From sequence record NC_047838.1: a stretch of DNA of 64,000 nt. One strand, written 5' to 3'. Position numbers and translations under genes: made by a program. Below, in pieces: positions 24,458-55,803 of this stretch; position 1 is the stretch's first letter; every line of letters begins with the position of its first letter. Under the pieces are notes generated by a model. That model ran no database searches. It saw only the letters and a list, made by a program, of their open reading frames with translations, and was not told where the DNA came from.

Positions 24458-27400
24458 ATGGGTCTTTCCAGATTAGATAATTTTCTGAAATCTACTCGTG
24501 GTACTATTCTTTATGTGGATCCGAATAGTTTAGACGCCACAGATAGTATTGAAAATCAGGGGAATTCGCTGACTCGTCCCTTCAAAACCATTCAGCGTGC
24601 TTTGATTGAAGCAGCAAGATTTTCATATCAGAGAGGTCTTGATAACGATAGATTTGGTAAGACCACAGTCTTATTGTATCCAGGTGATCACGTTGTTGAT
24701 AATAGACCAGGATATATTCCTGATGGATCGAATAATTATAAACTAAGAAACGGATCGACAACAGATAATCTCTCCCAGTTTGACTTATCTTCTAACTTTG
24801 ACCTCGCATCTTCTGACAACCAACTTCACAAACTTAATAGTGTTCGTGGTGGTGTCATCGTCCCAAGAGGCACATCTATCGTTGGTCTTGACCTTCGTAA
24901 GACAAAAATTAGACCAAAGTACATTCCAGATCCAGAGAATGACAATATTGAAGCATGTCCAGTTTTTAGAGTCACTGGTGCTTGCTATTTCTGGCAGTTT
25001 TCATTCTTTGATGGTGATCCAAATGGAAAGGTTTTTAAGGACTATACTTCAAACGAATTTGTACCCAACTTTTCTCACCACAAACTGAGATGTTTTGAAT
25101 ATGCTGATGGTCTTAATAACGTCGAAATCAACGATGAATTTATCAGTAATTTCAATGCAGGTCGTTCAGACCTTCAGATGTATTATGAGAAGGTAGGTAT
25201 TGCTTATGGTCAATCATCTGGTCGTGCAATTGAACCAGATTATCCATCTACAAGTCTTGATATTCAACCTAAGATTGATGAATATCGTATTGTTGGTTCT
25301 ACTGGCGAATCTGTTGGTATCAGCAGTATTAGAGCAGGTGATGGTGCTACACCAACCACTACGATCACCGTAACCACATCCTCTGCTGTCACAGGATTAG
25401 ATGTTGACACACCTTTCCGTATTGAAAACGTCAACTCTGATTATAATGGCGATTTCGTTGTAACTGAAAAGGTAAGTTCTACACAAATCAAATATACAGT
25501 ACAGAATGCTCCCTCTGATGCATTACCAACTGTATCTGGTTCATCATTAGCTCTGGTATCTGATACCGTCACCTCCGCATCTCCATATATCTTCAATATC
25601 TCTCTGAGATCCGTATATGGTATGTGCGGTATGCTTGCTGATGGTGCAACTGCAACTGGATTTAAGTCCATGGTTGTTGCACAGTTTACCGGTATCGGTC
25701 TTCAGAAAGACGAAAAGGCATTCGTCAAGTATAACGAGGACACCATCCCAACTGGTGCATATGACGATTATACTGCTGTAGATAATCTTCCAAGCAATTC
25801 AAAAGCAAGATATAAACCGAATTATAAAAACTTCCATATTAAGGTAACCAATAATTCGTTCATTCAGGCAGTTTCAATTTTTGCGATTGGATATGCTGAG
25901 CACTTTGTAACTGATACTGGTGGTGACATTTCACTTACCAACTCTAACTCTAATTTCGGTGCAGTATCCCTGGCATCTGAAGGATTTAGAAAAGATGCAT
26001 TCTCTCAGGATGATATTGGATATATTTCTCACATCATTCCACCTAAGGAAGTTCCACTTACCGAAACTTCTATTGAATTTGAATCTCTTGATATTACAAA
26101 AACAGATAGGGTTGCAGGTGTAGGATCAACCGGTAATCTCTACCTGTATGCCCAAACGAACGTTGATGCACCACCACAGAACGTTATTGACGGATACAGA
26201 TTTGGTGCAAGAACAAATGATAATCTGAGAGTTCTTGTCTCAGCAGCAGGTTCAGTAACTGAATATACTGCTCGTATTGTGATGGACGGTTCTCAATTAA
26301 CAGCAGAGAAGAAATATACTGTTAAACAGGGACCAACTGGAATTAACAGCATCGGTTCTTACAGTCAGGGTGGGTCTGATAGGCAGATTACACTTAACTC
26401 TACTCACAATCTTCTTAATGGTGAGTCTGTTAGAGTCATTAGTGAAAACGCTCACCTACCAGACGGATTAGACTCAAATACAGTTTATTTTGCGATTACA
26501 GATGCAAACACATCTGGTGGCATTACGACTAATGTTAATATTAAACTCGCTAAAACTCTTAATGATGCAATTAACGGATCACCTGCAATTGCCGTCAACG
26601 AAAAGGGTGGTGTTCTTAGTATTGTAAGTAGAGTTTCTGATAAGAACTCTGGAGAAATTGGTCACCCAGTTCAGTATGATGTAACTGAGAACCAGTGGTA
26701 TGTTAATGTAGCAACTGCTGCTACAGAGAACAACATTTTCTCAACCATCGTTGGACTTGGCACTACAGGACTAGGTGTTGCATCTCCAAGAACTTTCATC
26801 AAGAGAAAGAGTGACAATAGAAATGCTAATGACACTCTCTACAGAATGAGATATGTCATTCCTGCATCTACAGGAGGCACAGTAGCAAGACCACCAACTG
26901 AAGGATTCATTATTCAGGAATCTAACTCGTCAATTGGTATTAGCACCACAGAGATTCAGACATACTTTGGTAGTGGTTCTATTACTAATATCAATCAACA
27001 AAGAAACTTTAGATTTATTAGAGATGTTAGATGGGACGGATCTCAGGTTCACGTTACTACCGAACTCCCTCACAAACTTCAGCAGGATGATCAAGTTCAA
27101 CTTCTTAATATCACCGGTTCTCTGAATACTGCTGGAACAGCAGGAACTGCGTTCAACCGTGAGTATGCTGTTACTGGTATTACAAGTGCGACCACCTTTA
27201 GAGTTGGATTGACCACTAATCCTGGAACATTCACTAACGACACATCTACTAGAAATACCTCTCTCCCTTACTTCAAGAGAAAGAGAATCAAAGATACGAT
27301 GTATGTCTATCGTAACTTTGAGGCACAGCAGTATAAGGCGGGTGAGCAGGACGGTATCTATTACATTACCCTGCTTAACAGCAGCAATAGACCATCAGTA

Positions 27401-30388
27401 AGTCCATTTACCGATCAAAACTTCTCACAACCAGTTACTGCTCTCTTCCCACAAACTAATAGAGATACCCCAGTATCTGACCCACCAGAGACAACCTCTT
27501 TTGCAATTCCTAGTCTGATTGGTGAGGTTGTAATTGATGAACCACAAAATAGTGCAACTAAAGAAAATGTCACCAAGTACATCCGTGATGTAGGTATCGG
27601 TATTGGTATTACTGAACTGACATCTACTATTGCTGGAACTTCACATACTATTACCACAAATATTGATCACGGTCTCAACAGAATTACAACTGTTGGAATC
27701 TCAAGTGGTGGTGCAGGATATGGTTCAGGTGCAGCTGGAAGTCTGTATAATGCTAGATTAGTTTCTATCGGATCATCCATTACTGGTAAGCACGCCACAG
27801 GTAAGATCACCTTTAATGCTAATGGTGAGATTACTGCTGTTAAGATTATGAACGGTGGTAGCGCATATGGCATCGGTAACACACTTGCAGTTGTTGGTGT
27901 TGCAACCACAACTGGATATGTACAGGCAGTTGTTAATGTAAGTAAGATTTATGATAACGTCGGTGATACCATCAGAATTGCTGGTGTCGCATCTGCATCT
28001 TATAATGCATATAATGATGTATTCCGTATCACAGGTGTTGATGTTGGTGCAGCAACCAGTATCACAGTAGAATCACCCTCTGCAATTACTGGTTTCACTA
28101 CAACAGGTATTGGTGCTACAAATGCTGGCAAGGCATACCTCTACTTGACTGGTGGTGCAGTTGGCGTTACCACTATTAACTATGATAATAATAGTGGAAT
28201 TGCTACTGTTAAGACTGGTGTAAATCATGGATTTAGCGTTGACCAGAAGGTAAGACTCTCTGGTGCGACAAATAGCACTTATGTTGGTGACTTTGTTGTT
28301 ACTGAGAATGTTGGTCTTACCACTTTTGCTGTAAGAATTGGTGTAGGAACTGTAGCACCTGGTGTGAATGGAACCCTGTTTGCATTCCATGAAGGTATTA
28401 CATCAAATGATGGTAATGTCACTCAAGATGATGAGAATCTGGCAGGCAGAATGATTGCTCCATATGCTGGAATCACCACTACACTTTCTGCTGCCGTTTC
28501 TGACGCAACAGCAGAAACCATTTCAATTACCAATCTACCTGATCTAGATATCAATATTGGTGATTACTTAACTGTTGATAGTGAACTTGTTCGAGTCAAG
28601 ACTACAGTTGCACCAACTGACAACTCTCTGACTGTGTTTAGAGGTGTTCTTGGAACTAAGAGATCAACTCATGACTCTGGTTCTGTTGTCAGAAGAGTTG
28701 AGGTATCACCTACAGAACTTCGTAGACACTCAATCATTCGTGCCTCTGGGCATACCTTTGAGTATGTTGGTTTTGGACCTGGTAATTACTCTACTGCATT
28801 CCCCGATAAGCACGATAGAGCAATTAGTGCTGCTGAAGAATTGTTATCACAGTCTACAAAGAGAGACGGTGGTATCAACTTCTACACCGGAATGAATGAC
28901 AGAGGTATTTCTTTCGCAGGTAATAAGAAGTTAAGTACGATTACTGGTAAGGAAGAAATCTTTGACACTCCAGTTCAAACTGTGACTGGTGAGGACATTA
29001 GCGATGCACCAGCACTTAATATTACTGCTGCAACTGAGGGTCTGTTCAATCGTGCGATCAGAGTTGAAGGTGGCGATGATGGTAATTCATCCTCTGAATT
29101 CAACGGTCCTTTGATTGTCAATAATAAGTTGACTGTCAACGCTGATATGGAGACTAACAACCTGTTCATTCAGGGTGATGCAACTGTATCCAGAAAGCAC
29201 ACGGTTGGTATTGCTACTCCTGCACTTGCTGGTAACCCTGGTGATGTCATTTACCAAGCAAATCCAGGTGAAGGTTCATATGTTGGATGGGTTTATTCAC
29301 TTCAGAATGATTGGAAGAGATTTGGTGCGGTAAGTCTGAATAAGAATGCCAATATCATGACATTTGATGGTGTTGGTGTAGGAACCACAACTCCAGGTGC
29401 AAGCACATTCAGAGTTGGTTCGGGCACCACTCAGATGTCTGTTGATTCTGTTGGTGTTGGTATCGGAACCACGGCAAATCACTTCAAACTGCATGTAATT
29501 GGTGATACAAACATCGTCGGTACAGTTACCGCTACCACATTTGTTGGTGATGGTTCTGGTCTGACTGGTCTTAATACCTCTCTGTTTGGATGGACAAACC
29601 TTGCTGGTGGTGGATTATATGATACAGATCAGTTTAAAGTTGGTATCGGAACTGAGTCACCAAGGTTCAATCTTGAAGTTGGTGCAGTTGGCATGGGCAC
29701 CACGTCCATGCTGGTCAACGGTGAAGCAAGTTTCGTAGGATTCGCAACCTTTAACGATGTGTTCATTAGCGGTGGAACAACTGCTCTTGGACAATATCAT
29801 CTGGAGAATCTCTCCTCTGGTGTTATCCGTGCATCCTCTATCGGTATTGGTTCTACGTTTGTTCTTCAATCCTTCCAGGTTGGTTCTTCTAACACTCTTG
29901 GAATCTCAGAAGACAAACAGATCTTCACGGTATCTGGTATCGGTTCGGTCGGTGTTGGTACAACCAGCGCAAGATCTAACCTGGATGTTATCGGACACAC
30001 AAGACTTGAAACTGTCTCGCGTAATGTTGATTATGTTGAACCAAGTTCTAATGTTGTCACAGTTGACCTGTCATCTGCACAGAGTTTCATCTGCACCGCG
30101 AGAGCAGATATCAATCACTTCGTCTTAAATAATGCACCTCCAGGATCTTCTGAATTTACATTAAAGATTGATCAGGATTCTGATGGTAATCACTATGCAG
30201 TAGTTGATCACTTCCAGACAGGTGCAGGAACATCAATTCCAGTCTATTGGCCAGGTGGTGGAGTTCTGCCTGGTGTTACAACCACGGCAAGCAGATCTGA
30301 CATCTTTGCATACAGAACATTCGATGGTGAGAATATTACAACTGCTGGTCTATATGCAGTCGTGGTCGGTCAAAACTTCGCAAACTGA
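24458..30388 (+). CDS. Very large tail-fibre/baseplate-anchored structural protein (1976 aa) with C-terminal adaptor domain
   Basis: ILYVDP..RPFKTIQRA N-terminal motif of beta-helix fibre proteins; GIGT repeats; C-terminal ETV..VTVDLS..F domain shared with 50116 and 53758 genes; late promoter 24422. Confidence 0.7.
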   Translation: MGLSRLDNFLKSTRGTILYVDPNSLDATDSIENQGNSLTRPFKTIQRALIEAARFSYQRGLDNDRFGKTTVLLYPGDHVVDNRPGYIPDGSNNYKLRNGSTTDNLSQFDLSSNFDLASSDNQLHKLNSVRGGVIVPRGTSIVGLDLRKTKIRPKYIPDPENDNIEACPVFRVTGACYFWQFSFFDGDPNGKVFKDYTSNEFVPNFSHHKLRCFEYADGLNNVEINDEFISNFNAGRSDLQMYYEKVGIAYGQSSGRAIEPDYPSTSLDIQPKIDEYRIVGSTGESVGISSIRAGDGATPTTTITVTTSSAVTGLDVDTPFRIENVNSDYNGDFVVTEKVSSTQIKYTVQNAPSDALPTVSGSSLALVSDTVTSASPYIFNISLRSVYGMCGMLADGATATGFKSMVVAQFTGIGLQKDEKAFVKYNEDTIPTGAYDDYTAVDNLPSNSKARYKPNYKNFHIKVTNNSFIQAVSIFAIGYAEHFVTDTGGDISLTNSNSNFGAVSLASEGFRKDAFSQDDIGYISHIIPPKEVPLTETSIEFESLDITKTDRVAGVGSTGNLYLYAQTNVDAPPQNVIDGYRFGARTNDNLRVLVSAAGSVTEYTARIVMDGSQLTAEKKYTVKQGPTGINSIGSYSQGGSDRQITLNSTHNLLNGESVRVISENAHLPDGLDSNTVYFAITDANTSGGITTNVNIKLAKTLNDAINGSPAIAVNEKGGVLSIVSRVSDKNSGEIGHPVQYDVTENQWYVNVATAATENNIFSTIVGLGTTGLGVASPRTFIKRKSDNRNANDTLYRMRYVIPASTGGTVARPPTEGFIIQESNSSIGISTTEIQTYFGSGSITNINQQRNFRFIRDVRWDGSQVHVTTELPHKLQQDDQVQLLNITGSLNTAGTAGTAFNREYAVTGITSATTFRVGLTTNPGTFTNDTSTRNTSLPYFKRKRIKDTMYVYRNFEAQQYKAGEQDGIYYITLLNSSNRPSVSPFTDQNFSQPVTALFPQTNRDTPVSDPPETTSFAIPSLIGEVVIDEPQNSATKENVTKYIRDVGIGIGITELTSTIAGTSHTITTNIDHGLNRITTVGISSGGAGYGSGAAGSLYNARLVSIGSSITGKHATGKITFNANGEITAVKIMNGGSAYGIGNTLAVVGVATTTGYVQAVVNVSKIYDNVGDTIRIAGVASASYNAYNDVFRITGVDVGAATSITVESPSAITGFTTTGIGATNAGKAYLYLTGGAVGVTTINYDNNSGIATVKTGVNHGFSVDQKVRLSGATNSTYVGDFVVTENVGLTTFAVRIGVGTVAPGVNGTLFAFHEGITSNDGNVTQDDENLAGRMIAPYAGITTTLSAAVSDATAETISITNLPDLDINIGDYLTVDSELVRVKTTVAPTDNSLTVFRGVLGTKRSTHDSGSVVRRVEVSPTELRRHSIIRASGHTFEYVGFGPGNYSTAFPDKHDRAISAAEELLSQSTKRDGGINFYTGMNDRGISFAGNKKLSTITGKEEIFDTPVQTVTGEDISDAPALNITAATEGLFNRAIRVEGGDDGNSSSEFNGPLIVNNKLTVNADMETNNLFIQGDATVSRKHTVGIATPALAGNPGDVIYQANPGEGSYVGWVYSLQNDWKRFGAVSLNKNANIMTFDGVGVGTTTPGASTFRVGSGTTQMSVDSVGVGIGTTANHFKLHVIGDTNIVGTVTATTFVGDGSGLTGLNTSLFGWTNLAGGGLYDTDQFKVGIGTESPRFNLEVGAVGMGTTSMLVNGEASFVGFATFNDVFISGGTTALGQYHLENLSSGVIRASSIGIGSTFVLQSFQVGSSNTLGISEDKQIFTVSGIGSVGVGTTSARSNLDVIGHTRLETVSRNVDYVEPSSNVVTVDLSSAQSFICTARADINHFVLNNAPPGSSEFTLKIDQDSDGNHYAVVDHFQTGAGTSIPVYWPGGGVLPGVTTTASRSDIFAYRTFDGENITTAGLYAVVVGQNFAN

Positions 30389-30398: not shown

Positions 30399-32864
30399 AT
30401 GTTTAATAAGCAGACAACCCTGGATCTGGACGGACCAAAACTTGGTTTCAGTACAGATCCTCAAAATCTTACTGTAAATGCCGGGACAGCAGCAACCTTT
30501 GTTGCTATTGGAACGGCAACTTTTCCTTCAAATATTCCTGCAAAATTTGCAACAAACACAGGTATCGTAACTTATCGTTGGTATGTTGATGATGTTGCTG
30601 TTACTGATGACCCTGACACCGATGGTTTTGATGGTGTCAATTTTCTGGGTACAGGCACAACTACACTTCAGATTTTTAACAACACAACAACAAAGACTGT
30701 ATATTGTGAAGCAGACTATATTCCTAGTGCATATGGATTGCCAGGTGTTGCTGTTACCGTAGGAAGTGCAAGATCAACAGGACATGCGATTAGTGAACCA
30801 GTAAGAAGTGCTTCTGCTACTTTGTCACTCAATCCTAAACTTTCAATTGATACTCAACCAGTAGATAGAATTGTAGCAGTTGGTGTTGCTGCAACTTTTG
30901 GTGTTGATGCTAGTCTCACCAGTGGTTCTGCTGAGGGATTTAGTTATCAGTGGCAAATCAACGACTCTGATGTGTCCGATGGAGAACTAGAGGTTGGTGT
31001 CACAAGAACTGCAACTGCAAAATTAACTTATACGAAAGACGGTTCATCAAATGAGGTTGATTTTACAGAACTTTCAACACTAACACTCGGTGTTGGAACT
31101 TATGATATTACAGTAGATAATAATATTACCGCTGATTTAAGAGCACTTGGTGCTGGTGGCGGTGATTCAAATCAAAGATCTGTTGCTGGTGGTGCTGGTG
31201 GTCTTTCAACAGGAGAATTTACATTTTTAAGCGGCACAACTTATAAATTAGTTGTTGGTGGTAAAGGTGACAGCGGCGGTGGCAGAAATAATGGAGGTAG
31301 CGGTGGCGGTGGAAATTCTAGAATCGGATCCGGTGGTGGCGGTGGCGGTGGTGGATACACCGGACTTTTTGTTGGGTCAATTTCTCAGGATAATGCAGTA
31401 ATCATCGCTGGCGGTGGCGGAGGTGGAGCAAACGACCCTGCTGATGGAGGTGCTGGTGGTGGACTTACGGGGGGAGGTGGTGGTAATGCTCCTGGTAGGG
31501 GTGGCGATGGTGGAACACAATCTGCAGGTGGTGGCGCTGGATCTGTTGAAACTGATGGAACTGCTGGATCTGCACTTCAAGGAGGACCTGGTGCCGGTGG
31601 CGGCGGAGGCGGATACTTCGGCGGTGGTGGCGGAGGTGGACATAGTGGTTGTTGTGCTGATGGTGCTGGTGGAGGTGGTTCTGCTTATATTGGTTCATCT
31701 CTTCTGACTGATGGAGCGACTACACAAGGTGGTGGCGCAGCAAATGCGACTGATGGATCTTTTGAAATTACTGCTACCGAAACCTCAGTAGAAGTTCCAA
31801 TCAATCTTACAATTTCTGGATCAACATCTAATGTTCTGACAGTTTCTGGTGACGCTGCAGTCTCTGCTACTACTAAAGTTGTTGTAAGTAATTCAAATGC
31901 CTTCAATTCACCACTTACATCAGAGACAAGAACATTCACATCAACTGCTGCAAGACCATTATTAAAAATAGAACAAATTAACAATACAAATACTGCCACA
32001 CTATCAGAACACAATCTTGATGATGGCGAAATAACTTTTACGGACAATCCAGAGGACTCTTTTAATCAAATTTGTATTTACTCTCCAGAGAGAGATATTG
32101 AGATTGAAATGGATTTATTTGGTGGACATGGAGTTGATTCTGGATCCGGTGGTATTGGAGGACGAGGTGGATATTCTAAGATTAAATTTACTCTTGAACA
32201 AAATGTTGAATATATTATCACAGGATTATACAAAGAAATAAATGCTCCATTTGTATACAGAAAAGCAACTTTAATAGCTGTTGTGGGTGCAGGTGGAGAT
32301 ACTGGAAATGGAACTGCCGGTGGATTTGGTGGAAACGGTGGAGGTGTGAATATAGCAGGTCAAGATGCCAGACCTGGGGATACTGGTGGAGCTGGTGGAG
32401 ATTCAATTGAGGCAGGAACTCTACCATCAAGTGGATATTTTGGAACTTTAACGACATTAACTCCAGTGCTTACAGATACGACATCAGAAGAATTTCTAGG
32501 TGGGGGTAGAACTATTCCTTGTACAAGAGGTGTTTATTGGAGAAATCAAGGATTAAGTGCATGTGAAGATATTCCTTCTGAAAATAAATTTAGATTATCA
32601 GATGGAACTGAGGTTCAAAATACATCCTCTTCAATTACGAGAGGATTCAAAGCAGGATATAATATAATTGAAACAAGAGGAGCAAGTAGTCAAGGTAGTG
32701 GTGCCGGTGGTGCTGGTGCTATGGGCGGAAAAGGAGGACAAAATGGAAATAATACAGCAGGAGGTGGAGGATCAGGTTATACTGATGGATCTGTGACCGT
32801 TGTTGAAACCACACAGGGAGGGGGAGAAACACTTGCAACAGTTGTTATTAGACTTGCAAGTTGA
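30399..32864 (+). CDS. Ig-like plus glycine-rich (polyglycine-II) adhesin-like protein, tip 1
   Basis: Two Ig-like starts (TDPQNLTVNAG.AATF, QPVDRIVAVG.AATF..YQWQ) and GAGGG..GG....EF.F..G.TY.LVVGG.G glycine-rich segments. Confidence 0.65.
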   Translation: MFNKQTTLDLDGPKLGFSTDPQNLTVNAGTAATFVAIGTATFPSNIPAKFATNTGIVTYRWYVDDVAVTDDPDTDGFDGVNFLGTGTTTLQIFNNTTTKTVYCEADYIPSAYGLPGVAVTVGSARSTGHAISEPVRSASATLSLNPKLSIDTQPVDRIVAVGVAATFGVDASLTSGSAEGFSYQWQINDSDVSDGELEVGVTRTATAKLTYTKDGSSNEVDFTELSTLTLGVGTYDITVDNNITADLRALGAGGGDSNQRSVAGGAGGLSTGEFTFLSGTTYKLVVGGKGDSGGGRNNGGSGGGGNSRIGSGGGGGGGGYTGLFVGSISQDNAVIIAGGGGGGANDPADGGAGGGLTGGGGGNAPGRGGDGGTQSAGGGAGSVETDGTAGSALQGGPGAGGGGGGYFGGGGGGGHSGCCADGAGGGGSAYIGSSLLTDGATTQGGGAANATDGSFEITATETSVEVPINLTISGSTSNVLTVSGDAAVSATTKVVVSNSNAFNSPLTSETRTFTSTAARPLLKIEQINNTNTATLSEHNLDDGEITFTDNPEDSFNQICIYSPERDIEIEMDLFGGHGVDSGSGGIGGRGGYSKIKFTLEQNVEYIITGLYKEINAPFVYRKATLIAVVGAGGDTGNGTAGGFGGNGGGVNIAGQDARPGDTGGAGGDSIEAGTLPSSGYFGTLTTLTPVLTDTTSEEFLGGGRTIPCTRGVYWRNQGLSACEDIPSENKFRLSDGTEVQNTSSSITRGFKAGYNIIETRGASSQGSGAGGAGAMGGKGGQNGNNTAGGGGSGYTDGSVTVVETTQGGGETLATVVIRLAS

Positions 32865-38182: not shown

Positions 38183-38212
38183 TCTAAAACAAACTTAGTC
38201 AAAAGATAAAAG

Positions 38213-45684: not shown

Positions 45685-46047
45685 ATGGCACTGGAAAGAG
45701 GAAAACTTAGTAATGTCGTTCAGGTCGCAGCAGGTGCGACCGTGGGTATTGCTACTTGTGCATCCGGTAAGAAAGTCTATATTAAATCAATCATTTGCCA
45801 TGCTACAGGACTTGGTATTGCCACCGCTGCTGGTCAGGTTTACCTTACGCCTGCAGGTGTGACAACCAGTTCAAACACAAGAATCTTTGATATTAATATA
45901 GCGAGAGGAGAAACAGTATTATTAGAACCAGCATATCCGATCGTATTGGGAGAAAATGGAGATACTCTCGCCGTTGGAACAGGAAATGTAACTGGATTAG
46001 CAGCAACACACATCAACTTTATGATTACTGGCGATAAGGAGGCTTGA
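45685..46047 (+). CDS. Small adaptor, class beta (MALERG)
   Basis: YIKSIICH.TG..ETVLLE..YPIV..GD shared with 35838/39825; late promoter 45661. Confidence 0.6.
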   Translation: MALERGKLSNVVQVAAGATVGIATCASGKKVYIKSIICHATGLGIATAAGQVYLTPAGVTTSSNTRIFDINIARGETVLLEPAYPIVLGENGDTLAVGTGNVTGLAATHINFMITGDKEA

Positions 46048-47675: not shown

Positions 47676-47700
47676 CACTCCTCTGAACCTCATATATAAT
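47672..47700 (+). promoter_or_regulatory. Sigma70-type promoter TTGACA-17-TATAAT
   Basis: Perfect consensus upstream of three oxygenase genes. Confidence 0.85.
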
Positions 47701-47723
47701 AGACCTGAATACATTATAGGTAT

Positions 47724-48344: not shown

Positions 48345-48352
48345 GGTAGAAC

Positions 48353-49090
48353 ATGGCAGAACAAATGAACGAACTGCAGTTGTTGTTTCAGGAGAAGCAA
48401 AACACAGGAACTGCCTGGACTCGTAATGACAAATTTGAAAAAGATGGATATCTGGTAGTCAAAGATCTCTGGGATCCTGAAGAACTTTATCATCCAGTCC
48501 CTGAACAGAAAGGACAATACAACTATTGGGATAAGAACCCTGAACATTTTAATCATGTTCCTGTTGAAAATCAGGTTGAAGGTTCTACTGCACGTTATTG
48601 GCATCCACAATATCGTGCGATTCACTCTGGTGTTCGCATGAAACTGGAGAAAGAAATCGGTCGCAAACTGTATAATACCTATTACTATGATAGGTATTAT
48701 TATCCTGGACAAGAACTGACACGACATGCTGACCGTGATGCATGTGAAATCTCTGTTTCTATTCATGTTAGCACCAACCTAGAAGGCAAGGATGCTGATT
48801 GGCCTTTCTGGATTAAGACACCAGATACTTACACCGACAAAAAGAAGACAACTGTTCTTGTTCCTGGTGAGAATCGTTCCCTGGTTCTGAAACCTGGTGA
48901 TGGTATTCTTTATAAAGGATGTGAAAGACCACACTGGCGTGATGCTATGCCTGGTGTGCAAAAGAAGAAGAATAAGAAACTGTTTGGCAAGAAAACTTCA
49001 GAGACTGAACTTTATTACCACCAAATCTTCTTCCACTATGTTTTGCAGGATGGACAAAGAGCACACTGTGCATGGGATAGAGCACGATGA
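48353..49090 (+). CDS. 2OG-Fe(II) oxygenase
   Basis: RHADRDACEISVS, LKPGDGILYKGCERPHWR. Confidence 0.8.
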   Translation: MAEQMNELQLLFQEKQNTGTAWTRNDKFEKDGYLVVKDLWDPEELYHPVPEQKGQYNYWDKNPEHFNHVPVENQVEGSTARYWHPQYRAIHSGVRMKLEKEIGRKLYNTYYYDRYYYPGQELTRHADRDACEISVSIHVSTNLEGKDADWPFWIKTPDTYTDKKKTTVLVPGENRSLVLKPGDGILYKGCERPHWRDAMPGVQKKKNKKLFGKKTSETELYYHQIFFHYVLQDGQRAHCAWDRAR

Positions 49091-49638
49091 AGGCACCACT
49101 TTTTGAATATCCTACTTATCAATATCAGATTAAAGACTGGGAGTTCAAGAAGAAAGGATTACTTAAAAGGATTAAGGAGGAGAAGTTCGTAAGGACTGAC
49201 CTCCAAACCTTTGAAACTGATAGGCAGACCAATAAGAAATCCTATCTTCATTACTTCCAAGATCTAATCAAAGATGAGTTGTGGGAGTTTGTGCAAGAGG
49301 CACAAGTTACCTGTAGTATGACTGATGTGTGGACTGTCAGGTATCAAAAAGGTGATCACCAAACAATTCACAATCATAAGAGTTGGGGATTTACTGGTAT
49401 TCTTTATGTTGAGTATGACCCTAAAGTTCATACTCCTACCTGTTTTGTAGCACCATGGCAAGATCCTAGAAGTGATACTACATCTCTTGCTTATCCACAG
49501 AACGTGAAAGAGGGAACAATCTTTATCTCTCCATCTTATACCCTACACTTTGTGCATCCTAATCAAGTAAGAAAGCACAGAACGATTATGTCTTTTGACC
49601 TTTTACCTAAACTTCCTGACCACCAATCTGTTTCTTGA
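49087..49638 (+). CDS. 2OG-Fe(II) oxygenase (TIGR02466-like)
   Basis: HNH..FTGILYV, EGTIFISPS..LHFV..RTIMSFD. Confidence 0.75.
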   Translation: MKAPLFEYPTYQYQIKDWEFKKKGLLKRIKEEKFVRTDLQTFETDRQTNKKSYLHYFQDLIKDELWEFVQEAQVTCSMTDVWTVRYQKGDHQTIHNHKSWGFTGILYVEYDPKVHTPTCFVAPWQDPRSDTTSLAYPQNVKEGTIFISPSYTLHFVHPNQVRKHRTIMSFDLLPKLPDHQSVS

Positions 49639-51051: not shown

Positions 51052-53235
51052 ATGAGTGTATTTAACGAGTTTTTTAAGAAAGAAAAACCACATTTTACTG
51101 GTATTTCTAGAGGATTGGGTGGTTTTGGTTTTGGTGCCGGTGTTGTCGTTTCTGAGGATGGATCTCCTGGTGGATTACTTGTACCAGATAACATGGGGTC
51201 TGGTGGAGTTATTGAGGTAACTGGCGGCACTATTCGTCACGTCTTTATTTCTCCAGGAACATTCCAAGCTGGACCAGAGCATCCAGGAACAGTTCAATAT
51301 CTGGTCCTCGGTGGAGGTGGTGGCGGAGGTGGTGCTCACCACGGTGCTGGTGGTGGTGCTGGCGGATTGGTCATCGATACATCTCACCCCATTAGTGCTG
51401 GAACACCATATGCCATTACTGTTGGTGAAGGTGGTCAAGGCGGAAAAGGTAATAGAAATAACCCCAAGAACCCAGGTGTAGGTGGTAATGGTGCTGCCTC
51501 AACCGCATTTGGTGCTACTGCTAATGGTGGCGGAGGTGGTGGTTGCTCAACTCCTGGTCAACCGCCTGCTTATGATTTAGGACAACCTGGAGGTTGTGGT
51601 GGTGGTGCTGGTGGATCTGGTGCAAATGATTCTCCCGGTACTGCAACAGGAAGCACAGCTGGTCCAGGCACCGTATATGGAAATGCAGGTGGACCAAAAG
51701 GTAGTCCCAATACTGATCCTGGATACTTCGGCGGCGGAGGAGGTGGTGCCGGTGGTGTCGGTGGTACAGGTGGAACTGCTCCACCGGATAAAGGTGCTGG
51801 CGGTCAAGGATATGATGCTCCAGACATATTTAATGTCGGTGATAATGGAACTGGATCTCCTTGGACTGGATGGTCACCAAGTAACCCTGGATCATCTAGA
51901 TTTGGTGGTGGTGGATCTTCAGCTGCATACAGCAGATCCACCATCGGAGCAGGTGGAGAAGGTGGTGGAGGTTCTGCTGGTTGGGCTAATAGCACTAACT
52001 CTAATAATCCAGGACATCCGACTGCCTCTAATGGACACCCTGGTAGAAACTACTTTGGTTGCGGCGGTGGCGGCGGAGAAAGAAATGGAGTTGGCGGTGG
52101 TCATGGAGGTAATGGAGTCGTTATTGTTGCATATGATGCCTCACCAACACCTTTCTGCTCAGGTAGAACCAGTGCCACTAAACTTGTAGAAGCTACAGGT
52201 GGATTTATTTCTGAACACTTAAATCCTGATGGAGTTAGTGTTGATAGAGTTCATATGTTCTCTGCTTTCCAAAATGATGAGGCAGCTCAAGATTCTGGTG
52301 CTGGTAAAGCACAACAACTGTTTATAGTCACCGCAGTTCCTGGTCCTGGTGCTGCTGATATTCTTCTCGTCGGTGGTGGTGGCGGTGGAGGATATAAAGG
52401 TGGCGGTGGAGGTGGTGGTCAAGTTGTGACTGCTCCGGTTACACTTACCGCACAAACTTATATTGTAAAAGTTGGAACTGGTGGTCAGGGTGATATGCCA
52501 ACTTCTTCTCCCACGGGAACGGAGGCTAGTCACAGACCCGGAGGATCAACAACATTTGGACCACCATCAGCAAACTCTACATTCGGAGCAGGTGGTGGAG
52601 GAAAAGGTGGATCTGACAGCACCCCGAATGACCCTGATAAGAGCGGTGACAACGGTTATCAAGATGGATCTGGTGGCGGTGTAGCTGGCGGAGGTTATGG
52701 GTTCGGTTCAAGTGCTGGTTCTAGTGGCACTACTAACCCATCACCAAATCCAGGTGGAACTGGATACTCAAATCCTGGAGGTGGTAGAGGTTCTTCACCA
52801 TATGATCCATATAATAATGGTGGTGGCGGCGGTGGTGCCGGTGGTGCCGGTTCTGCTGGTGGATCTGGAAATGGCAACGGTGGTGCTGGAGTGGAAATTT
52901 CTCTGTTTGATATGTACGGCACCAATAGTTCAAATAGTGTTGCAGGAAGCACCAGTAAAGGATACTTCGGTGGTGGCGGAGGAGGAGGCGGTGATGCTCC
53001 ACCTTCAGGTGCCGGTGGATCAGGTGGTGGCGGATTCGGTGTGAATCCCTCCACCGGTTGGGCAGGTGCTAGACCATCGCCTAGTTGGCCAGATTCCATG
53101 GCAAGTCGTGCTAGAAGCGGACTCCCAGGAACCGGCGGTGGTGGCGGTGGAGGTTCTAATGAAACCGATCAAGCTACCGGTGGTGATGGAGGAGATGGTA
53201 TCTTCTGCATTAGATACAAGTATATTGCTGGTTGA
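51052..53235 (+). CDS. Two-domain glycine-rich adhesin-like protein, tip 6
   Basis: FNEFFKKEKP leader; two glycine-rich units. Confidence 0.7.
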   Translation: MSVFNEFFKKEKPHFTGISRGLGGFGFGAGVVVSEDGSPGGLLVPDNMGSGGVIEVTGGTIRHVFISPGTFQAGPEHPGTVQYLVLGGGGGGGGAHHGAGGGAGGLVIDTSHPISAGTPYAITVGEGGQGGKGNRNNPKNPGVGGNGAASTAFGATANGGGGGGCSTPGQPPAYDLGQPGGCGGGAGGSGANDSPGTATGSTAGPGTVYGNAGGPKGSPNTDPGYFGGGGGGAGGVGGTGGTAPPDKGAGGQGYDAPDIFNVGDNGTGSPWTGWSPSNPGSSRFGGGGSSAAYSRSTIGAGGEGGGGSAGWANSTNSNNPGHPTASNGHPGRNYFGCGGGGGERNGVGGGHGGNGVVIVAYDASPTPFCSGRTSATKLVEATGGFISEHLNPDGVSVDRVHMFSAFQNDEAAQDSGAGKAQQLFIVTAVPGPGAADILLVGGGGGGGYKGGGGGGGQVVTAPVTLTAQTYIVKVGTGGQGDMPTSSPTGTEASHRPGGSTTFGPPSANSTFGAGGGGKGGSDSTPNDPDKSGDNGYQDGSGGGVAGGGYGFGSSAGSSGTTNPSPNPGGTGYSNPGGGRGSSPYDPYNNGGGGGGAGGAGSAGGSGNGNGGAGVEISLFDMYGTNSSNSVAGSTSKGYFGGGGGGGGDAPPSGAGGSGGGGFGVNPSTGWAGARPSPSWPDSMASRARSGLPGTGGGGGGGSNETDQATGGDGGDGIFCIRYKYIAG

Positions 53236-53266: not shown

Positions 53267-53728
53267 ATGGCAGTCACCCAAGCTACAACTCTTGCTGATT
53301 TTACTAGTGGTATTGGTACTGCTGGTGCTATATTACAAGTAGATAATGCAGATCAGAGGGTCGGTATTGGCACCACCGATCCACAAGCAACTCTGCAAGT
53401 GGGTATTGCCATTACGATGGATGGCACCGCTGGTGTTATCACAGCAACCAAGTTTGTTGGAGAAGGATCACAATTAACAGGTGTATCTGGTCTTGGTACT
53501 GCTCTCAGTAATACCACTACAAATCCATTAAGTAAGATATTCTTTGTCAATCAGACATTAGATATTACATCAGAAACTACAGTTACTGCACCAGACTCTG
53601 CATCCCAAAGTGTAGATGGGTTTAATGTTGCGTACACTAACTTCCAAGACGTAAGTTGTGATGATGGTATTGATTTAATTATTGCTGACGGATCAGACCT
53701 CGTGTTAGATGTGCTCCAACTCCGATAA
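53267..53728 (+). CDS. Connector protein, class gamma (MAVTQA)
   Basis: GLGTAL..PL..DVLQ C-terminus; late promoter 53240. Confidence 0.6.
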   Translation: MAVTQATTLADFTSGIGTAGAILQVDNADQRVGIGTTDPQATLQVGIAITMDGTAGVITATKFVGEGSQLTGVSGLGTALSNTTTNPLSKIFFVNQTLDITSETTVTAPDSASQSVDGFNVAYTNFQDVSCDDGIDLIIADGSDLVLDVLQLR

Positions 53729-53757
53729 CTATAAATAACTAGAAAGATGATAGGGTA

Positions 53758-54771
53758 ATGTCAAGAGTAAGAGCAGACAAACTTGTCAATAGAGCAGCGA
53801 GTGGCGCTCCTGAATTAACATATGGTGCCCAAGTTGTCACCGGTATGGGTATTACTGGTGCCGGTGGAATCAACATCACCGGTGTTGCAACTGCTGGTAG
53901 TTTTGTAGGAAACATTACTGGTAATGTAACTGGTAACGCTACAGGACTGACTGGCACTCCTGATATTACTGTTGATGGCATTACTGCCAACGATATTAAC
54001 GTCAGCGGATCTTGCACCATTACAGGTAATTTAACTGTTGATGGCACTCAGACGATTGTTAATACATCAACTCTTGATATTGCTGATAAGACTGTAGGTA
54101 TTGCATCCACGACAGCAGCAACCGATGCAACTGCTGATGGTGCAGGTATTGAAATCTATGCAAGTTCAACGGAAGCAGATAATAATAAGACAATTCTGTG
54201 GCAGAGAGATACTGGATGCTTTGAGTTTAGTGAACCAACGAAACATAAAGGTGTTGTAGAGACTGTTGCAGCAGCATCAACTCATACAGATACAAGTGGT
54301 AATGTGGTCTTAGAACTAGACATGGCCGCGGCAACCACATTTACCCATACAATTCCTGCTGCAAGTAGTGCAGGAAGAGGATTGAATATTGGTATTGTTT
54401 CGTTCAAGAACATGCCAGCAGATAATGGTGTGGCAAACGGACAATCAGTCACCGTTATCTTCACTCAAGCATCATCTGCACACGGTGGTGCAACTGGAGC
54501 AGGTAATACTGTAGCAACAAATGGTATTGGTGCTACATGTAATATTGCTGCATTTGAAGATGGATCTGTTAAGGCAGGTATTTCAACTAGAGCATTTGTT
54601 GGTGGAGGAACTGGTGCTGCATCAACTGTGACACTATCTCCCGAGAAGAATGATATTGACTTTGTTTCCTTCTTCGTTCAATACACAGGTGGAACAAATA
54701 CTGACCTGAAGAGTTATAAAGTATACGTCACGAAGAACGGTGGGTTCAATCAAGGCAGCGTAGGCGTTTGA
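53758..54771 (+). CDS. Stalk with fused C-terminal adaptor domain (MSRVRADK)
   Basis: Paralogue of 50116; late promoter TATAAATAACT 53730. Confidence 0.65.
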   Translation: MSRVRADKLVNRAASGAPELTYGAQVVTGMGITGAGGINITGVATAGSFVGNITGNVTGNATGLTGTPDITVDGITANDINVSGSCTITGNLTVDGTQTIVNTSTLDIADKTVGIASTTAATDATADGAGIEIYASSTEADNNKTILWQRDTGCFEFSEPTKHKGVVETVAAASTHTDTSGNVVLELDMAAATTFTHTIPAASSAGRGLNIGIVSFKNMPADNGVANGQSVTVIFTQASSAHGGATGAGNTVATNGIGATCNIAAFEDGSVKAGISTRAFVGGGTGAASTVTLSPEKNDIDFVSFFVQYTGGTNTDLKSYKVYVTKNGGFNQGSVGV

Positions 54772-54786: not shown

Positions 54787-55803
54787 ATGGGTATCTTCAA
54801 CGAGTTTTTTAAGAAAGAAAAACCAGTTTTTACTGGACTTAAATTTGGTTTTGGTTCTGGTGGTGGTGGTGCAGCTGCACCTTCTCCAGTTTCTGCATCT
54901 GGCGGTACAAGAGAATCTAACGGAATTACACCTGGAAATGGTTACAGATATCATGTTTTTACATCGCCAGGAACTTTTACTGTTACTAGTGGAGGAAATG
55001 TCGAATTCCTTGTAGTTGGTGGTGGCGGTAGTGGTGGAACAGCAGGTACTCCTGGACACGGTGGAAACGGTGGTGCAGGAGGTGGTGGTGTACGAACAGG
55101 AACCGCACTTCCAGTTACAGCTAACGACTACACTATAACTATTGGTGCTGGTTCAGGTAATCCATCTAGAAGTGGAACACCATCTAGTATTGCTGGTCCA
55201 GATATTACTACGGTCACTGGACTTGGTGGCGGTGGAGGTGGGTTAGATTCTGATGATTCAGTTGGAACAAGCACGTCAGTTGGATCTGGTGGAGGATCTT
55301 GGGGTGGTGGTGGAGCGGTGGCGAATGTTCCTGGGGGACAACCATCGCAACCCACCGATTATGGTTCAACTAATTATGGAAATAGTGGTGGTGGTGGTGC
55401 TGATAGTCCTGCTTGGAATGGTGGAGGAGGTGGTGGTGCTGGTGCTGCTGGAAGTCCCAATCCTGCTAATAATGTGGCAGGTGATGGCGGCGCAGGTCAA
55501 CCACTACCTGCATATTCCGCACCGGTATTACAACCCGGTATTCCAACACCCGTCTGGCCTGTATTTGGTCCAACTGTAGGACCAACTGGTCTCTACGCTG
55601 GAGGCGGTGGTGGTGGTAGATCTCACCCCCAAGCAGGTGGTGGTGGTGGCGGAACTAATGGATCAGGTGGACCTGGTGGTGGAGGTAATGCAGATTTTGA
55701 TGGAAAGGTTAATACTGGTGGTGGTGGAGGGGCTCGCAGTCCAGATTCATCCGCTAACCCAACTGGCGGAACAGGTATAGTTGTGATAAGATACCAAGTC
55801 TGA
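54787..55803 (+). CDS. Single-domain glycine-rich adhesin-like protein, tip 7
   Basis: FNEFFKKEKP leader; one glycine-rich unit ending GIVVIRYQV. Confidence 0.7.
   Translation: MGIFNEFFKKEKPVFTGLKFGFGSGGGGAAAPSPVSASGGTRESNGITPGNGYRYHVFTSPGTFTVTSGGNVEFLVVGGGGSGGTAGTPGHGGNGGAGGGGVRTGTALPVTANDYTITIGAGSGNPSRSGTPSSIAGPDITTVTGLGGGGGGLDSDDSVGTSTSVGSGGGSWGGGGAVANVPGGQPSQPTDYGSTNYGNSGGGGADSPAWNGGGGGGAGAAGSPNPANNVAGDGGAGQPLPAYSAPVLQPGIPTPVWPVFGPTVGPTGLYAGGGGGGRSHPQAGGGGGGTNGSGGPGGGGNADFDGKVNTGGGGGARSPDSSANPTGGTGIVVIRYQV

What the first reader, a model, noticed from the sequence alone, without database searches (positions are those of the whole stretch)
24458..55803. Array of seven glycine-rich (polyglycine-II-type) fibre-tip proteins, each on its own stalk/adaptor cassette
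Seen: seven glycine-rich genes (30399, 36242, 40244, 43016, 46051, 51052, 54787). Six are built from one or two copies of the same ~300-aa unit (A[TS]GG...H.F..SG.F / [VI].YL[VI].GGG.GG / GG.G[IV]V[VILA].[RA]Y), ten units in total, with highly variable G/P/S/N loops between fixed glycine runs. Each tip gene lies 2-15 nt behind a gene ending in a small beta-rich adaptor domain, which in turn follows or is fused to a stalk with GNVTG/ATSF repeats. Established: T-even gp38 adhesins and the ALK/LTK glycine-rich domain fold as polyglycine-II sandwiches, and the hypervariable gp38 loops determine receptor choice. Inference: this is a multi-adhesin, probably branched, host-recognition apparatus or a repertoire of alternative tips.
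Basis: partly seen in the sequence, partly recalled or inferred. Interest (0 to 1): 0.85.

Follow-up and report, generated by a model that had tools for sequence, protein, structure and literature searches.

The report
Seven glycine-rich cyanophage fibre tips
A marine Synechococcus phage (Bellamy) carries seven unannotated genes for glycine-rich fibre-tip proteins of a known fold, each coupled to its own short stalk; the tips are far more variable than the stalks in wild relatives, which makes them the best candidates for what this phage uses to recognise its hosts.

Summary
The window is bases 1-64000 of Synechococcus phage Bellamy, a T4-like Kyanoviridae phage. Seven glycine-rich genes sit at the stated starts. 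Six consist of one or two copies of a ~300-aa unit, ten units in all, and each starts 2-15 nt after the upstream gene. The six match Pfam Gly_rich_2 (PF21722); the first gene matches ALK_LTK_GRD (PF12810). An AlphaFold model of one unit (pLDDT 84.5) finds the Bxb1 tail tip, the Pam3 fibre and ALK/LTK in the PDB, but not S16 gp38. Late-promoter motifs precede stalk and adaptor genes and never a tip gene. In 20 environmental relatives the stalk and adaptor proteins are 82-100% identical where the tips are 42-52%, and the number of units behind one adaptor varies from 1 to 3. Published EM shows branched fibres on Bellamy. No invertible segment or DGR-like repeat was found. Most likely the genes encode a multi-tip, simultaneously expressed host-recognition apparatus. 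The domain family is known and very large (37,082 cluster representatives); the array is a new variant. One caveat: the "adaptors" form three sequence-unrelated families. In passing, a trio of two 2OG-Fe(II) oxygenases and an unknown protein accompanies such tip arrays in several phage lineages.

The parts
24458..30388 (+). Long tail-fibre protein (1976 aa), stalk of cassette 1
   Evidence: phrog_529 tail fibre, E=0. RefSeq 'tail fiber protein'. 61% identical to S-SM2 SSM2_030. ATAAATA motif 36 nt upstream.
30399..32864 (+). Tip 1 (821 aa, 21% Gly): conserved N-terminal ~200 aa followed by an ALK/LTK-type glycine-rich domain
   Evidence: Pfam PF12810, 55.2 bits against a 24.5 cut-off, residues 248-435. 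phrog_24848. In L006 the N-terminal 200 aa are 96-100% identical and the Gly-rich part 40-86%. Starts 10 nt after the fibre gene.
32907..34352 (+). Baseplate-wedge / fibre-connector-like protein (481 aa)
   Evidence: phrog_8215 'baseplate wedge initiator' and phrog_677 'tail fiber protein connector'. 84-99% identical in near relatives.
34386..35815 (+). Cassette 2 stalk: two genes, 34386-34925 (179 aa) and 34925-35815 (296 aa)
   Evidence: phrog_26609; phrog_18345/6942 tail fibre. ATAAATA 27 nt upstream of 34386. In S-SM2 the 34925 homologue is the N-terminus of a 919-aa fibre.
35838..36239 (+). Adaptor type 1 (133 aa, phrog_20100)
   Evidence: AF2 model is all-beta, pLDDT 72.9. Foldseek gives only generic jelly-roll matches. 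3,430 90%-identity clusters in metagenomes. ATAAATA 23 nt upstream.
36242..38149 (+). Tip 2 (635 aa, two units: aa 1-339 and 340-635)
   Evidence: PF21722 E=3.6e-38, phrog_2295. 42-52% identical in relatives whose adaptor is 83-98% identical.
38213..38647 (+). Small tip-associated protein (144 aa, phrog_7759) forming its own transcription unit
   Evidence: A sigma70-like promoter at 38146-38174 (11 of 12 positions) and a terminator at 38652-38671. 36% identical to the gene that follows the tip array in podovirus-like contig L023. Function unknown.
38708..39804 (+). Cassette 3 stalk: two genes, 38708-39412 (234 aa) and 39412-39804 (130 aa)
   Evidence: phrog_18345 tail fibre. ATAAATA 25 nt upstream of 38708. 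100% and 87% identical in L004.
39825..40232 (+). Adaptor type 1 (135 aa, phrog_20100)
   Evidence: 60% identical to 35838. 98% identical in L004.
40244..42235 (+). Tip 3 (663 aa, two units: aa 1-342 and 343-663)
   Evidence: PF21722 E=4.6e-23. In L004 the first 50 aa are 78% identical and the rest 30-56%.
42259..42594 (+). Cassette 4 stalk (111 aa)
   Evidence: phrog_30742/6942 tail fibre. ATAAATA 24 nt upstream.
42624..43004 (+). Adaptor type 2 (126 aa); no PHROG or Pfam hit
   Evidence: No family hit. Orthologues in L015, L017, L019, L021 and L022 are each followed by a tip. Not homologous to type 1.
43016..45151 (+). Tip 4 (711 aa, two units: aa 1-398 and 399-711)
   Evidence: PF21722, phrog_2295.
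45174..45656 (+). Cassette 5 stalk (160 aa)
   Evidence: phrog_6942 tail fibre. ATAAATA 23 nt upstream.
45685..46047 (+). Adaptor type 1 (120 aa, phrog_20100)
   Evidence: phrog_20100 E=3.7e-49. 36% identical to 35838.
46051..47106 (+). Tip 5 (351 aa, one unit); the protein that was modelled
   Evidence: AF2 pLDDT 84.5, pTM 0.83. Foldseek matches to Bxb1 tail tip, Pam3 fibre and ALK/LTK. 155 BFVD matches.
47130..49638 (+). Oxygenase island that splits the array: PF13759 (47130/47202-47675), PF13640 (47724-48344), an unknown 245-aa protein labelled 'ferrochelatase' (48353-49090), PF13759 (49087-49638)
   Evidence: Pfam. Perfect sigma70-type promoter at 47672-47700. The same trio lies next to PF21722 arrays in other phage lineages.
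49665..51039 (+). Cassette 6 stalk: 49665-50081 (138 aa, phrog_28668) and 50116-51039 (307 aa, phrog_36132; stalk and adaptor type 3 fused)
   Evidence: PHROG hits. ATAAATA 27 and 35 nt upstream.
51052..53235 (+). Tip 6 (727 aa, two units: aa 1-364 and 365-727)
   Evidence: PF21722 E=2.2e-18. Its N-terminus resembles that of tip 7, which sits behind the same adaptor type.
53267..54771 (+). Cassette 7 stalk: 53267-53728 (153 aa, phrog_28668) and 53758-54771 (337 aa, phrog_36132)
   Evidence: PHROG hits. 50% identical to 50116. TATAAATA 27 nt upstream of 53758.
54787..55803 (+). Tip 7 (338 aa, one unit)
   Evidence: PF21722 E=1.1e-9, phrog_2295.

Best explanation
The region encodes the distal host-recognition apparatus of the T4-like cyanophage Bellamy. 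It comprises seven fibre cassettes, each a short chain of stalk proteins that ends in a beta-sandwich adaptor onto which a separate tip protein docks.

Each tip has a ~40-60-residue N-terminal segment that is not glycine-rich and is inherited together with the adaptor; I infer that this is the docking peptide. It is followed by one or two units of a beta-sandwich from which hairpins of polyglycine-II-type strands project. These strands form a rigid glycine lattice, and the variable loops at its far end would contact the host surface. This follows the Pam3 gp24 / ALK 'TNF-like plus glycine-rich' plan.

Stalk and adaptor genes are read from T4-type late promoters. Each tip gene is co-transcribed and probably translationally coupled with its adaptor, which would give matched stoichiometry.

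All cassettes appear to be expressed together, giving the branched, multi-tipped fibres seen by EM. In the population the glycine-rich bodies, but not the scaffold, are replaced and split or fused (1-3 units behind one adaptor), as expected for receptor-binding parts under diversifying selection.

Shown: gene layout, family membership, predicted fold, promoter layout, and the conservation contrast. Inferred: presence in the virion, docking through the N-terminal peptide, receptor binding by the loops, and simultaneous display.
For: - **Identity and context.** The window is Bellamy bases 1-64000. The neighbours are tail-fibre and baseplate PHROGs.
- **Family.** Pfam PF21722 (six proteins) and PF12810 (one) are above their cut-offs.
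- **Fold.** AF2 model pLDDT 84.5, pTM 0.83, with confident glycine runs that lack regular secondary structure. PDB Foldseek gives Bxb1 tail tip (E=3.8e-4), Pam3 fibre 7ypx_A (1.9e-3), then about 20 ALK/LTK entries. [quoted passage not shown]
- **Use of the domain elsewhere.** Metagenomic relatives fuse PF21722 to the T4 gp9/gp10 N-terminal domain. BFVD relatives fuse it to lectin, FN3, PA14 and collagen-repeat modules.
- **Expression layout.** NATAAATA-type motifs lie 23-36 nt upstream of ten stalk and adaptor genes and of no tip gene. Tips start 2-15 nt after the adaptor, behind GGTA/GGAGG. The motif is documented for cyanomyoviruses (PMC2984593), and Bellamy has a gp55-like late sigma factor.
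- **Variation.** In near relatives the scaffold is 82-100% identical and the tips 42-52%. DNA similarity stops about 200-300 nt inside a tip gene and resumes about 40 nt before its stop. 22 of 26 assessable adaptors in relatives are followed by a tip, with 1-3 units behind the same adaptor.
- **Morphology.** EM shows branched fibres at the baseplate and a similar cluster at the head apex (PMC5646251).
- **No switching device.** No inverted repeats or DGR-like repeats were found.
Against: - No virion proteomics or transcript data for Bellamy were found, so structural status is inferred.
- TM-scores to solved structures are low (0.28-0.46) and the sequence-profile match to Pam3 is not significant (E=4.5). 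The fold assignment therefore rests on Pfam, the AF2 model and the consistency of the hit list.
- The three adaptor types are unrelated in sequence, and only one was modelled, at moderate confidence (pLDDT 72.9). Its matches are generic jelly rolls.
- Nothing shows which cassette attaches where. Some may belong to the head-apex cluster rather than the tail.
- The oligomeric state of the tips is unknown: Pam3 gp24 is a trimer and, from my own knowledge, S16 gp38 is a monomer.
- For polyglycine 'brush' domains of mycobacteriophages a role in lipid contact, rather than specific receptor recognition, has been suggested (PMC13252515, PMC13243795).
Confidence: 0.65

Rival explanations
1. Split deployment. 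Only some cassettes build tail fibres for adsorption. Others build the fibre cluster on the head vertex opposite the tail, which might serve reversible capture, sensing or aggregation rather than triggering infection.
For: [quoted passage not shown] No other glycine-rich or similar cassette exists elsewhere in the genome, so any apex fibres of this kind must be encoded here. The cassettes fall into distinct architectural groups (adaptor types 1, 2 and 3), and the array is separate from the core baseplate module at 76-115 kb.
Against: No sequence feature assigns any cassette to the head. No portal- or vertex-binding domain was recognised. This reading is not exclusive of the main explanation.
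Confidence: 0.2
2. Alternative-tip repertoire. The cassettes compete for a limited number of docking sites, so each virion carries only a subset and the progeny are mixed in specificity.
For: Three adaptors belong to one family (35838, 39825, 45685), as do two stalk-adaptor fusions (50116, 53758). Several stalk N-termini resemble one another and a segment of the long fibre, which could mean shared docking sites.
Against: Every cassette has its own stalk and late-promoter motifs. No invertible segment, recombinase site or near-identical repeat was found. EM describes branched rather than sparse fibres.
Confidence: 0.1
3. Non-virion role. The glycine-rich proteins act as assembly chaperones, as T4 gp38 does according to PMC9608196, or otherwise work inside the infected cell and are absent from the particle.
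For: T4 gp38 is a chaperone not incorporated into mature particles (PMC9608196). No proteomic evidence exists for Bellamy.
Against: The nearest solved structures are virion components (Pam3 fibre, Bxb1 tail tip). A chaperone is not expected to be the most variable gene of the locus while its client is 82-100% conserved. Fusions to baseplate-attachment, lectin, FN3 and collagen-repeat modules occur in relatives.
Confidence: 0.05

Closest known systems
Cyanophage Pam3 tail fibre gp24 (PDB 7YPX, 7YFW)
   Same: A cyanophage fibre protein in which a TNF-like beta-sandwich extends into a glycine-rich lattice with a conserved stem and a variable distal tip (PMC9608196). It is among the top three Foldseek matches (E=1.9e-3, prob 0.99). 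It is also the only phage protein returned by the profile search of PDB sequences, though that match is not significant.
   Different: Pam3 gp24 is a single 3-domain protein with an N-terminal helical bundle that docks directly on the baseplate, and it has a downstream chaperone. Bellamy tips have no predicted helices, are separate proteins behind beta-sandwich adaptors, carry one or two larger units (~300 aa against ~125 aa of glycine-rich domain), and come in seven copies. TM-score is only 0.30-0.40.
Polyglycine-rich ('brush') domains of mycobacteriophage tail tips (Bxb1, PDB 9D93) and the phage LSH1 hub
   Same: Best Foldseek match (9d93_Qa/Qb, E=3.8e-4 and 1.9e-3). These are glycine-rich fingers at the tail tip, regarded as antireceptors (PMC13252515, PMC13243795).
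   Different: They are found on siphovirus central-fibre or hub proteins of phages infecting mycolata or gamma-proteobacteria. Lipid contact has been suggested as their role. They are not organised as an array of separate tip genes.
Salmonella phage S16 / T2-type gp38 adhesin (PDB 6F45)
   Same: The working principle is the same: a separate small adhesin attached through its N-terminus to the end of a fibre, with a polyglycine sandwich whose variable loops choose the receptor (as summarised in PMC9608196). In both cases the gene lies directly downstream of the fibre gene.
   Different: It was not recovered by sequence and is not among the 50 Foldseek matches listed. This is an analogue, not a demonstrated homologue.
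ALK/LTK extracellular TNF-like plus glycine-rich (TG) domain (Pfam PF12810; PDB 7NX3, 7LS0 and others)
   Same: Tip 1 matches PF12810 above threshold. About 20 ALK/LTK entries follow the phage hits in Foldseek (E=0.015-0.8).
   Different: These are animal receptor kinases that bind a protein ligand. The Foldseek probabilities are low (0.07-0.33). The relationship is one of shared fold class only.
Multi-protein T4 long tail fibre (gp34-gp37), and phages with several receptor-binding proteins on branched adaptors (own knowledge: e.g. CBA120, G7C, phi92)
   Same: Fibres are built from a chain of short proteins encoded in order and expressed from late promoters. Several different tips on one virion would widen or layer recognition.
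   Different: No homologues of T4 gp34-37 are recognised in cyanomyoviruses (PMC2984593). The tips here are polyglycine domains rather than tailspike enzymes.

Membership tests
Pfam PF21722 Gly_rich_2 | Whole-protein score above the curated gathering threshold (24.3 bits) | tested here: met
   Six proteins score 37.9-132.2 bits, and the four long ones have two matched stretches each. Nearly all of the 120 listed metagenomic homologues carry PF21722.
Pfam PF12810 ALK_LTK_GRD | Score above the gathering threshold (24.5 bits) | tested here: met
   Tip 1 (30399) scores 55.2 bits, E=1.3e-14, residues 248-435. The other six do not match this model.
TNF-like plus glycine-rich fibre tip (Pam3 gp24 type) | A beta-sandwich whose strands continue into a stacked lattice of extended glycine-rich segments | tested here: inconclusive
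   The AF2 model has 12 strands plus long, confident (pLDDT>90) segments without regular secondary structure at the Gly runs. Foldseek to 7ypx_A gives prob 0.99 but TM only 0.30/0.40. Model coordinates could not be inspected for PGII dihedral angles.
TNF-like plus glycine-rich fibre tip (Pam3 gp24 type) | Significant sequence homology to gp24 | tested here: not met
   Profile A1 against PDB sequences gives E=4.5-5 to 7yfw_a/7ypx_A. Single sequences give no hits.
TNF-like plus glycine-rich fibre tip (Pam3 gp24 type) | Present in the virion as a trimeric fibre | not testable with these tools
   No proteomic or structural data for Bellamy tips were available.
T-even gp38 adhesin (S16/T2 type) | Sequence or fold match to gp38 | tested here: not met
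   No gp38 family appears in the Pfam scan at E<=1. There is no PDB sequence hit. 6F45 is absent from the 50 Foldseek matches listed.
T-even gp38 adhesin (S16/T2 type) | A separate adhesin gene directly downstream of the fibre or adaptor gene, with a conserved N-terminal attachment part and a variable body | tested here: met
   Spacers are 2-15 nt. The first 50 residues are 54-88% identical in relatives against 30-60% for the body. DNA similarity runs from the adaptor into the first 200-300 nt of the tip gene.
T4-type late (structural) gene class | NATAAATA-type late promoter upstream, and a gp55-like sigma factor in the genome | tested here: met
   Motifs lie 23-36 nt upstream of ten stalk and adaptor genes. 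The window holds 19 copies against 12.0+-3.2 in shuffles, 12 of them in spacers of this region. The motif is documented in PMC2984593. The late sigma gene is annotated. Activity was not tested.
Diversity-generating or phase-variable tip systems (DGR, invertible fibre segments) | Template/variable repeat pair, or inverted repeats flanking the tip genes | tested here: not met
   The only inverted pair is 34 nt at 71% complementarity. The direct repeats are GGN-codon runs or paralogues of at most 80% identity.

The most novel reading that the evidence does not exclude
The conserved trio comprises a PF13640 prolyl-hydroxylase-like oxygenase, a PF13759 oxygenase and an unknown ~205-245-aa protein that Bellamy's record mislabels 'ferrochelatase'. 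On this reading it is not a metabolic 'auxiliary' module but a fibre-maturation module that hydroxylates the Pro-Gly-rich loops of the polyglycine tips. That would give a structural role to part of the long-unexplained 2OG-Fe(II) oxygenase complement of marine cyanophages.

The trio sits inside the Bellamy tip array. It also lies within about 3 kb of tandem PF21722 genes in SU10-like podovirus contigs and in a T4-like myovirus contig. The tips carry 4-18 Pro-Gly dipeptides each, against 0-1 in the two stalk proteins counted.
Probability: 0.2. Interest if true: 0.8.

Novelty: new variant of a known kind. Interest (0 to 1): 0.6.

Why it matters
The receptor-binding proteins of marine T4-like cyanophages are still largely unassigned: homologues of T4 gp34-37 and gp12 are missing (PMC2984593). 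Yet these phages control Synechococcus and Prochlorococcus populations.

This locus gives a concrete, testable assignment: seven tip genes with twelve glycine-rich domains, a conserved scaffold, and hypervariable bodies. It also links them to a published but genetically unexplained morphology, the branched fibres at both poles of Bellamy.

The adaptor family alone forms 3,430 90%-identity clusters in metagenomes. Its conserved sequence could serve as an anchor for reading tip diversity, and hence potential host-range structure, directly from ocean metagenomes.

The analysis also shows why the family has been overlooked. Low-complexity filters blind BLAST-based tools to it, and all seven genes are 'hypothetical' in RefSeq.

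Tried and rejected
- **tblastn with a tip against 50,697 phage records.** It found only the query itself, because the low-complexity filter masks the protein. The search for related loci with the unit alignment matched 598 patterns but confirmed none, for the same reason. I switched to the adaptor as the query.
- **Sequence search of the PDB.** Single tips gave no hits. The profile gave only non-significant hits.
- **One common adaptor domain.** Rejected by hhalign: probability <1% between types 1, 2 and 3, and against the C-terminus of the long fibre.
- **A specific fold for the adaptor.** Foldseek returned only generic jelly-roll matches, with none at E<1e-3.
- **DGR, shufflon or invertible-segment mechanisms.** No supporting repeats were found.
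- **More tip genes elsewhere in Bellamy.** None were found.
- **Function of 38213 and 48353.** Pfam, NCBIfam and PDB sequence searches gave nothing usable.
- **Structure prediction of the adaptor with orthologues from loci.** I repeated it with database homologues.
- **Bxb1 structure paper.** It was not held in the library.

Full report
**Identity of the window.** The window is identical to bases 1-64000 of Synechococcus phage Bellamy (MF351863.1 / NC_047838.1), in the same coordinates. Bellamy belongs to Kyanoviridae, genus Bellamyvirus, and its host is WH8109. In RefSeq all seven glycine-rich genes are 'hypothetical protein'.

**The observation.**
- ORFs begin at all seven stated positions.
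- Glycine makes up 21% of the 30399 product and 30-34% of the other six, against 3-18% for their neighbours.
- Self-comparison shows that the four long proteins (635, 663, 711 and 727 aa) each hold two copies, and the two short ones (351 and 338 aa) one copy, of a ~300-360-aa unit. The units are 34-48% identical to one another.
- The ten-unit alignment A1 has 43 invariant columns, almost all glycine, and 64 columns at >=90% conservation. Fourteen indel hot spots lie between the conserved glycine runs.
- Each tip gene starts 2-15 nt after the preceding gene.
- No further unit or glycine-rich ORF exists in the window or in the remaining 141 kb of the genome.
- This is far beyond chance, and the coordinates are right.

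**What the tips are.**
- The six unit-bearing proteins match Pfam Gly_rich_2 (PF21722) and phrog_2295. The first matches ALK_LTK_GRD (PF12810) and phrog_24848. All are above the curated cut-offs.
- An AlphaFold2 model of 46051, built on 45 sequences, has pLDDT 84.5 and pTM 0.83. It shows a disordered N-terminal ~30-40 residues, about 12 beta strands, and long confident stretches without regular secondary structure at the glycine runs.
- Against the PDB, the best matches are the Bxb1 tail tip (9d93_Qa/Qb) and the Pam3 fibre (7ypx_A), followed by about twenty ALK/LTK entries.
- TM-scores are low (0.28-0.46), and sequence searches of the PDB are not significant. The assignment is therefore to a fold class, not to a close relative.
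- S16 gp38 did not come back in any search.
- Pam3 gp24 is a virion fibre with a TNF-like sandwich that extends into a glycine-rich lattice. That lattice has a conserved stem and a variable tip, and the authors proposed that it recognises the host (PMC9608196).
- Polyglycine-rich 'brush' domains are also described on mycobacteriophage and LSH1 tail tips (PMC13252515, PMC13243795).

**Size of the family.**
- The A1 profile finds 37,082 50%-identity cluster representatives at E<=1e-3 and 2,310 at E<=1e-30.
- These include many 620-740-aa two-unit proteins and giants with up to 20 matched stretches.
- BFVD holds 155 viral models at E<=1e-3, from cyanophage S-TIM4, pelagiphage HTVC025P, Halorubrum phage HF2 and prasinoviruses. 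Some are fused to lectin, FN3, PA14 or collagen-repeat modules.
- Some metagenomic members carry a T4 gp9/gp10 N-terminal domain.

**The scaffold.**
- The genes between the tips hit tail-fibre and baseplate-connector PHROGs, or small families of unknown function.
- The genes directly upstream of the tips fall into three families with no detectable relationship to one another:
  - phrog_20100: 35838, 39825 and 45685;
  - a second family: 42624;
  - the C-terminal part of phrog_36132: 50116 and 53758.
- The C-terminus of the 1976-aa fibre matches none of these.
- The phrog_20100 adaptor is predicted to be all-beta (pLDDT 72.9) and gives only generic jelly-roll matches.
It is plausible in fold for one type, and it is not a single domain family.
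- The GNVTG/ATSF motif is real but occurs only 1-4 times per protein.

**Expression layout.**
- The cyanomyovirus late-promoter motif NATAAATA (PMC2984593) lies 23-36 nt upstream of ten stalk and adaptor genes (64 nt for 38213). Close variants precede three more.
- None precedes a tip gene. The tips sit behind GGTA/GGAGG-type ribosome-binding sequences.
- Twelve of the window's 17 plus-strand copies lie in spacers of this region. The window total on both strands is 19, against 12.0+-3.2 in shuffles.
- Bellamy encodes a gp55-like late sigma factor.
- The layout argues that the cassettes are late, structural and expressed together, and that each tip is made from the same message as its adaptor.
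- No invertible segment or DGR-like repeat pair is present.

**Relatives.**
- Using the adaptor as the query gave 20 environmental contigs.
- They keep the same cassette order.
- In the closest ones the scaffold proteins are 82-100% identical, while the tips are only 42-52% identical. That is the same level as paralogues within Bellamy.
- At DNA level, ~88-93% similarity runs from the adaptor into the first 200-300 nt of the tip gene. It then vanishes and returns about 40 nt before the stop.
- The first 50 residues of a tip are 54-88% identical where the body is 30-60%.
- Tips 6 and 7, which sit behind the same adaptor type, share their N-terminal segment.
- This fits an N-terminal docking segment that travels with the adaptor, and a replaceable body.
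- Of 32 adaptor genes in the relatives, 22 are followed within 40 nt by a unit-bearing ORF, and 6 more lie at contig ends.
- Behind the 35838-type adaptor there is one two-unit gene, or one, two or three single-unit genes, or one single-unit gene plus one two-unit gene. Units are therefore fused and split, which suggests that neighbouring units work in one assembly.
- S-SM2, from a different genus, has the syntenic locus: the long fibre (61% identical), a tip-1 homologue and the oxygenase island. It has longer conventional fibres in place of the PF21722 cassettes.

**Morphology.** Hua et al. [quoted passage not shown] They note that the head cluster resembles the baseplate cluster. No genes were assigned in the passages read. 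The seven cassettes are the obvious candidates. Which cassette goes where cannot be told from sequence.

**Mechanism proposed.**
- Short stalk proteins chain up, and a beta-sandwich adaptor closes each stalk.
- The tip docks through its N-terminal segment.
- The one or two sandwich-plus-polyglycine units present variable loops to the cell surface.
- All cassettes are expressed late and displayed together.
- Diversification occurs by replacement and by fusion or fission of tip bodies between related phages.
- Confidence is about 0.65. The steps from gene layout to fold class and to the conservation contrast are shown. Virion presence, docking, receptor binding and simultaneous display are inferred.

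**Rivals.**
- Split deployment between tail and head apex (0.2, not exclusive of the main explanation).
- Competition of alternative tips for shared docking sites (0.1).
- A non-virion, chaperone-like role (0.05).

**Seen in passing.**
- The array is interrupted at 47130-49638 by PF13759, PF13640, an unknown 245-aa protein labelled 'ferrochelatase' but without any family support, and a second PF13759 gene. A perfect sigma70-type promoter lies at 47672-47700.
- In six of the seven assessable metagenomic contexts looked up, tandem PF21722 genes (2-4) lie within about 3 kb of a PF13640 gene, a PF13759 gene and a homologue of that unknown protein. The seventh (L026) has only a PF13759 gene beside its single tip gene. 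These contexts include SU10-like podovirus contigs and a T4-like myovirus contig. Most belong to one podovirus lineage, so there are only about three or four independent lineages.
- The homologues are 30-35% identical to 48353 and 32-34% identical to 47724.
- 47724 weakly resembles PKHD-type (prolyl-4-hydroxylase-like) hydroxylases, below the curated cut-off.
- The tips hold 4-18 Pro-Gly dipeptides each, against 0-1 in the two stalk proteins counted.
- Earlier work proposed nitrogen-stress or DNA-repair roles for these oxygenases (PMC3037559). A role in fibre maturation is an untested alternative.

**Verdict.** The corrections are that the nearest solved relatives are Pam3 gp24, the Bxb1 tail tip and ALK rather than gp38, and that the adaptors are three unrelated families. 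The domain is a known, very large family. The seven-cassette array with hypervariable, fusing and splitting tips in a T4-like cyanophage is a new variant, and a useful handle on cyanophage host recognition.

Noticed in passing
window 47130-49638; L023 13902-15793; L024 12321-14203; L025 8837-10779; L027 3284-5366; L033 11513-13512; L034 12112-14111: A trio of a PF13640 oxygenase, a PF13759 oxygenase and an unknown ~205-245-aa protein lies inside or within about 3 kb of tandem PF21722 tip genes. This holds in Bellamy, in SU10-like podovirus contigs and in a T4-like myovirus contig. It may be a fibre-modifying (hydroxylating) module rather than a metabolic one.
   Followed up: partly
window 48353-49090: RefSeq calls this gene 'ferrochelatase', but it has no Pfam, NCBIfam or PDB sequence match. 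It is 80% identical in S-SM2, and 30-35% identical homologues accompany the oxygenase pair in unrelated phage contigs. The label looks unsupported.
   Followed up: partly
window 38146-38671: Gene 38213 (144 aa, phrog_7759) has its own sigma70-like promoter (11 of 12 positions, with TG) and a strong terminator. A 36%-identical homologue follows the tip array in podovirus-like contig L023 (12944-13393). It may be a tip-associated helper; its function is unknown.
   Followed up: partly
database hits P0241-P0390: Metagenomic proteins of 2,000-7,300 aa carry up to 20 matched stretches of the same glycine-rich unit. Their hosts and their roles are unknown.
   Followed up: no
window 23706-24173; L031 5523-5985: tRNA-Leu and tRNA-Thr genes lie directly upstream of the long fibre gene, in the same arrangement in Bellamy and S-SM2. 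Bellamy also encodes a tRNA-Gly outside the window (record 155539-155609), while the tips use mainly GGT and GGA codons.
   Followed up: no
L015, L016 (IMG/VR contigs): In two environmental relatives some orthologues are split into several ORFs. The tip-1 orthologue has one break in each contig, and the long-fibre orthologue in L016 has two breaks. Whether these are real or assembly errors is unknown.
   Followed up: no
window 15150-23215: Upstream of the array lie a 1993-aa 'virion structural protein' with five stretches matching a major-head-protein PHROG, and a pair of paralogous genes (21762, 22553; 52% identical over 132 aa). Both arrangements are conserved in S-SM2.
   Followed up: no
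(tools): BLAST-based tools with low-complexity filtering cannot see this family at all, not even the paralogues in the same genome. This probably explains why the genes are annotated as hypothetical.
   Followed up: yes
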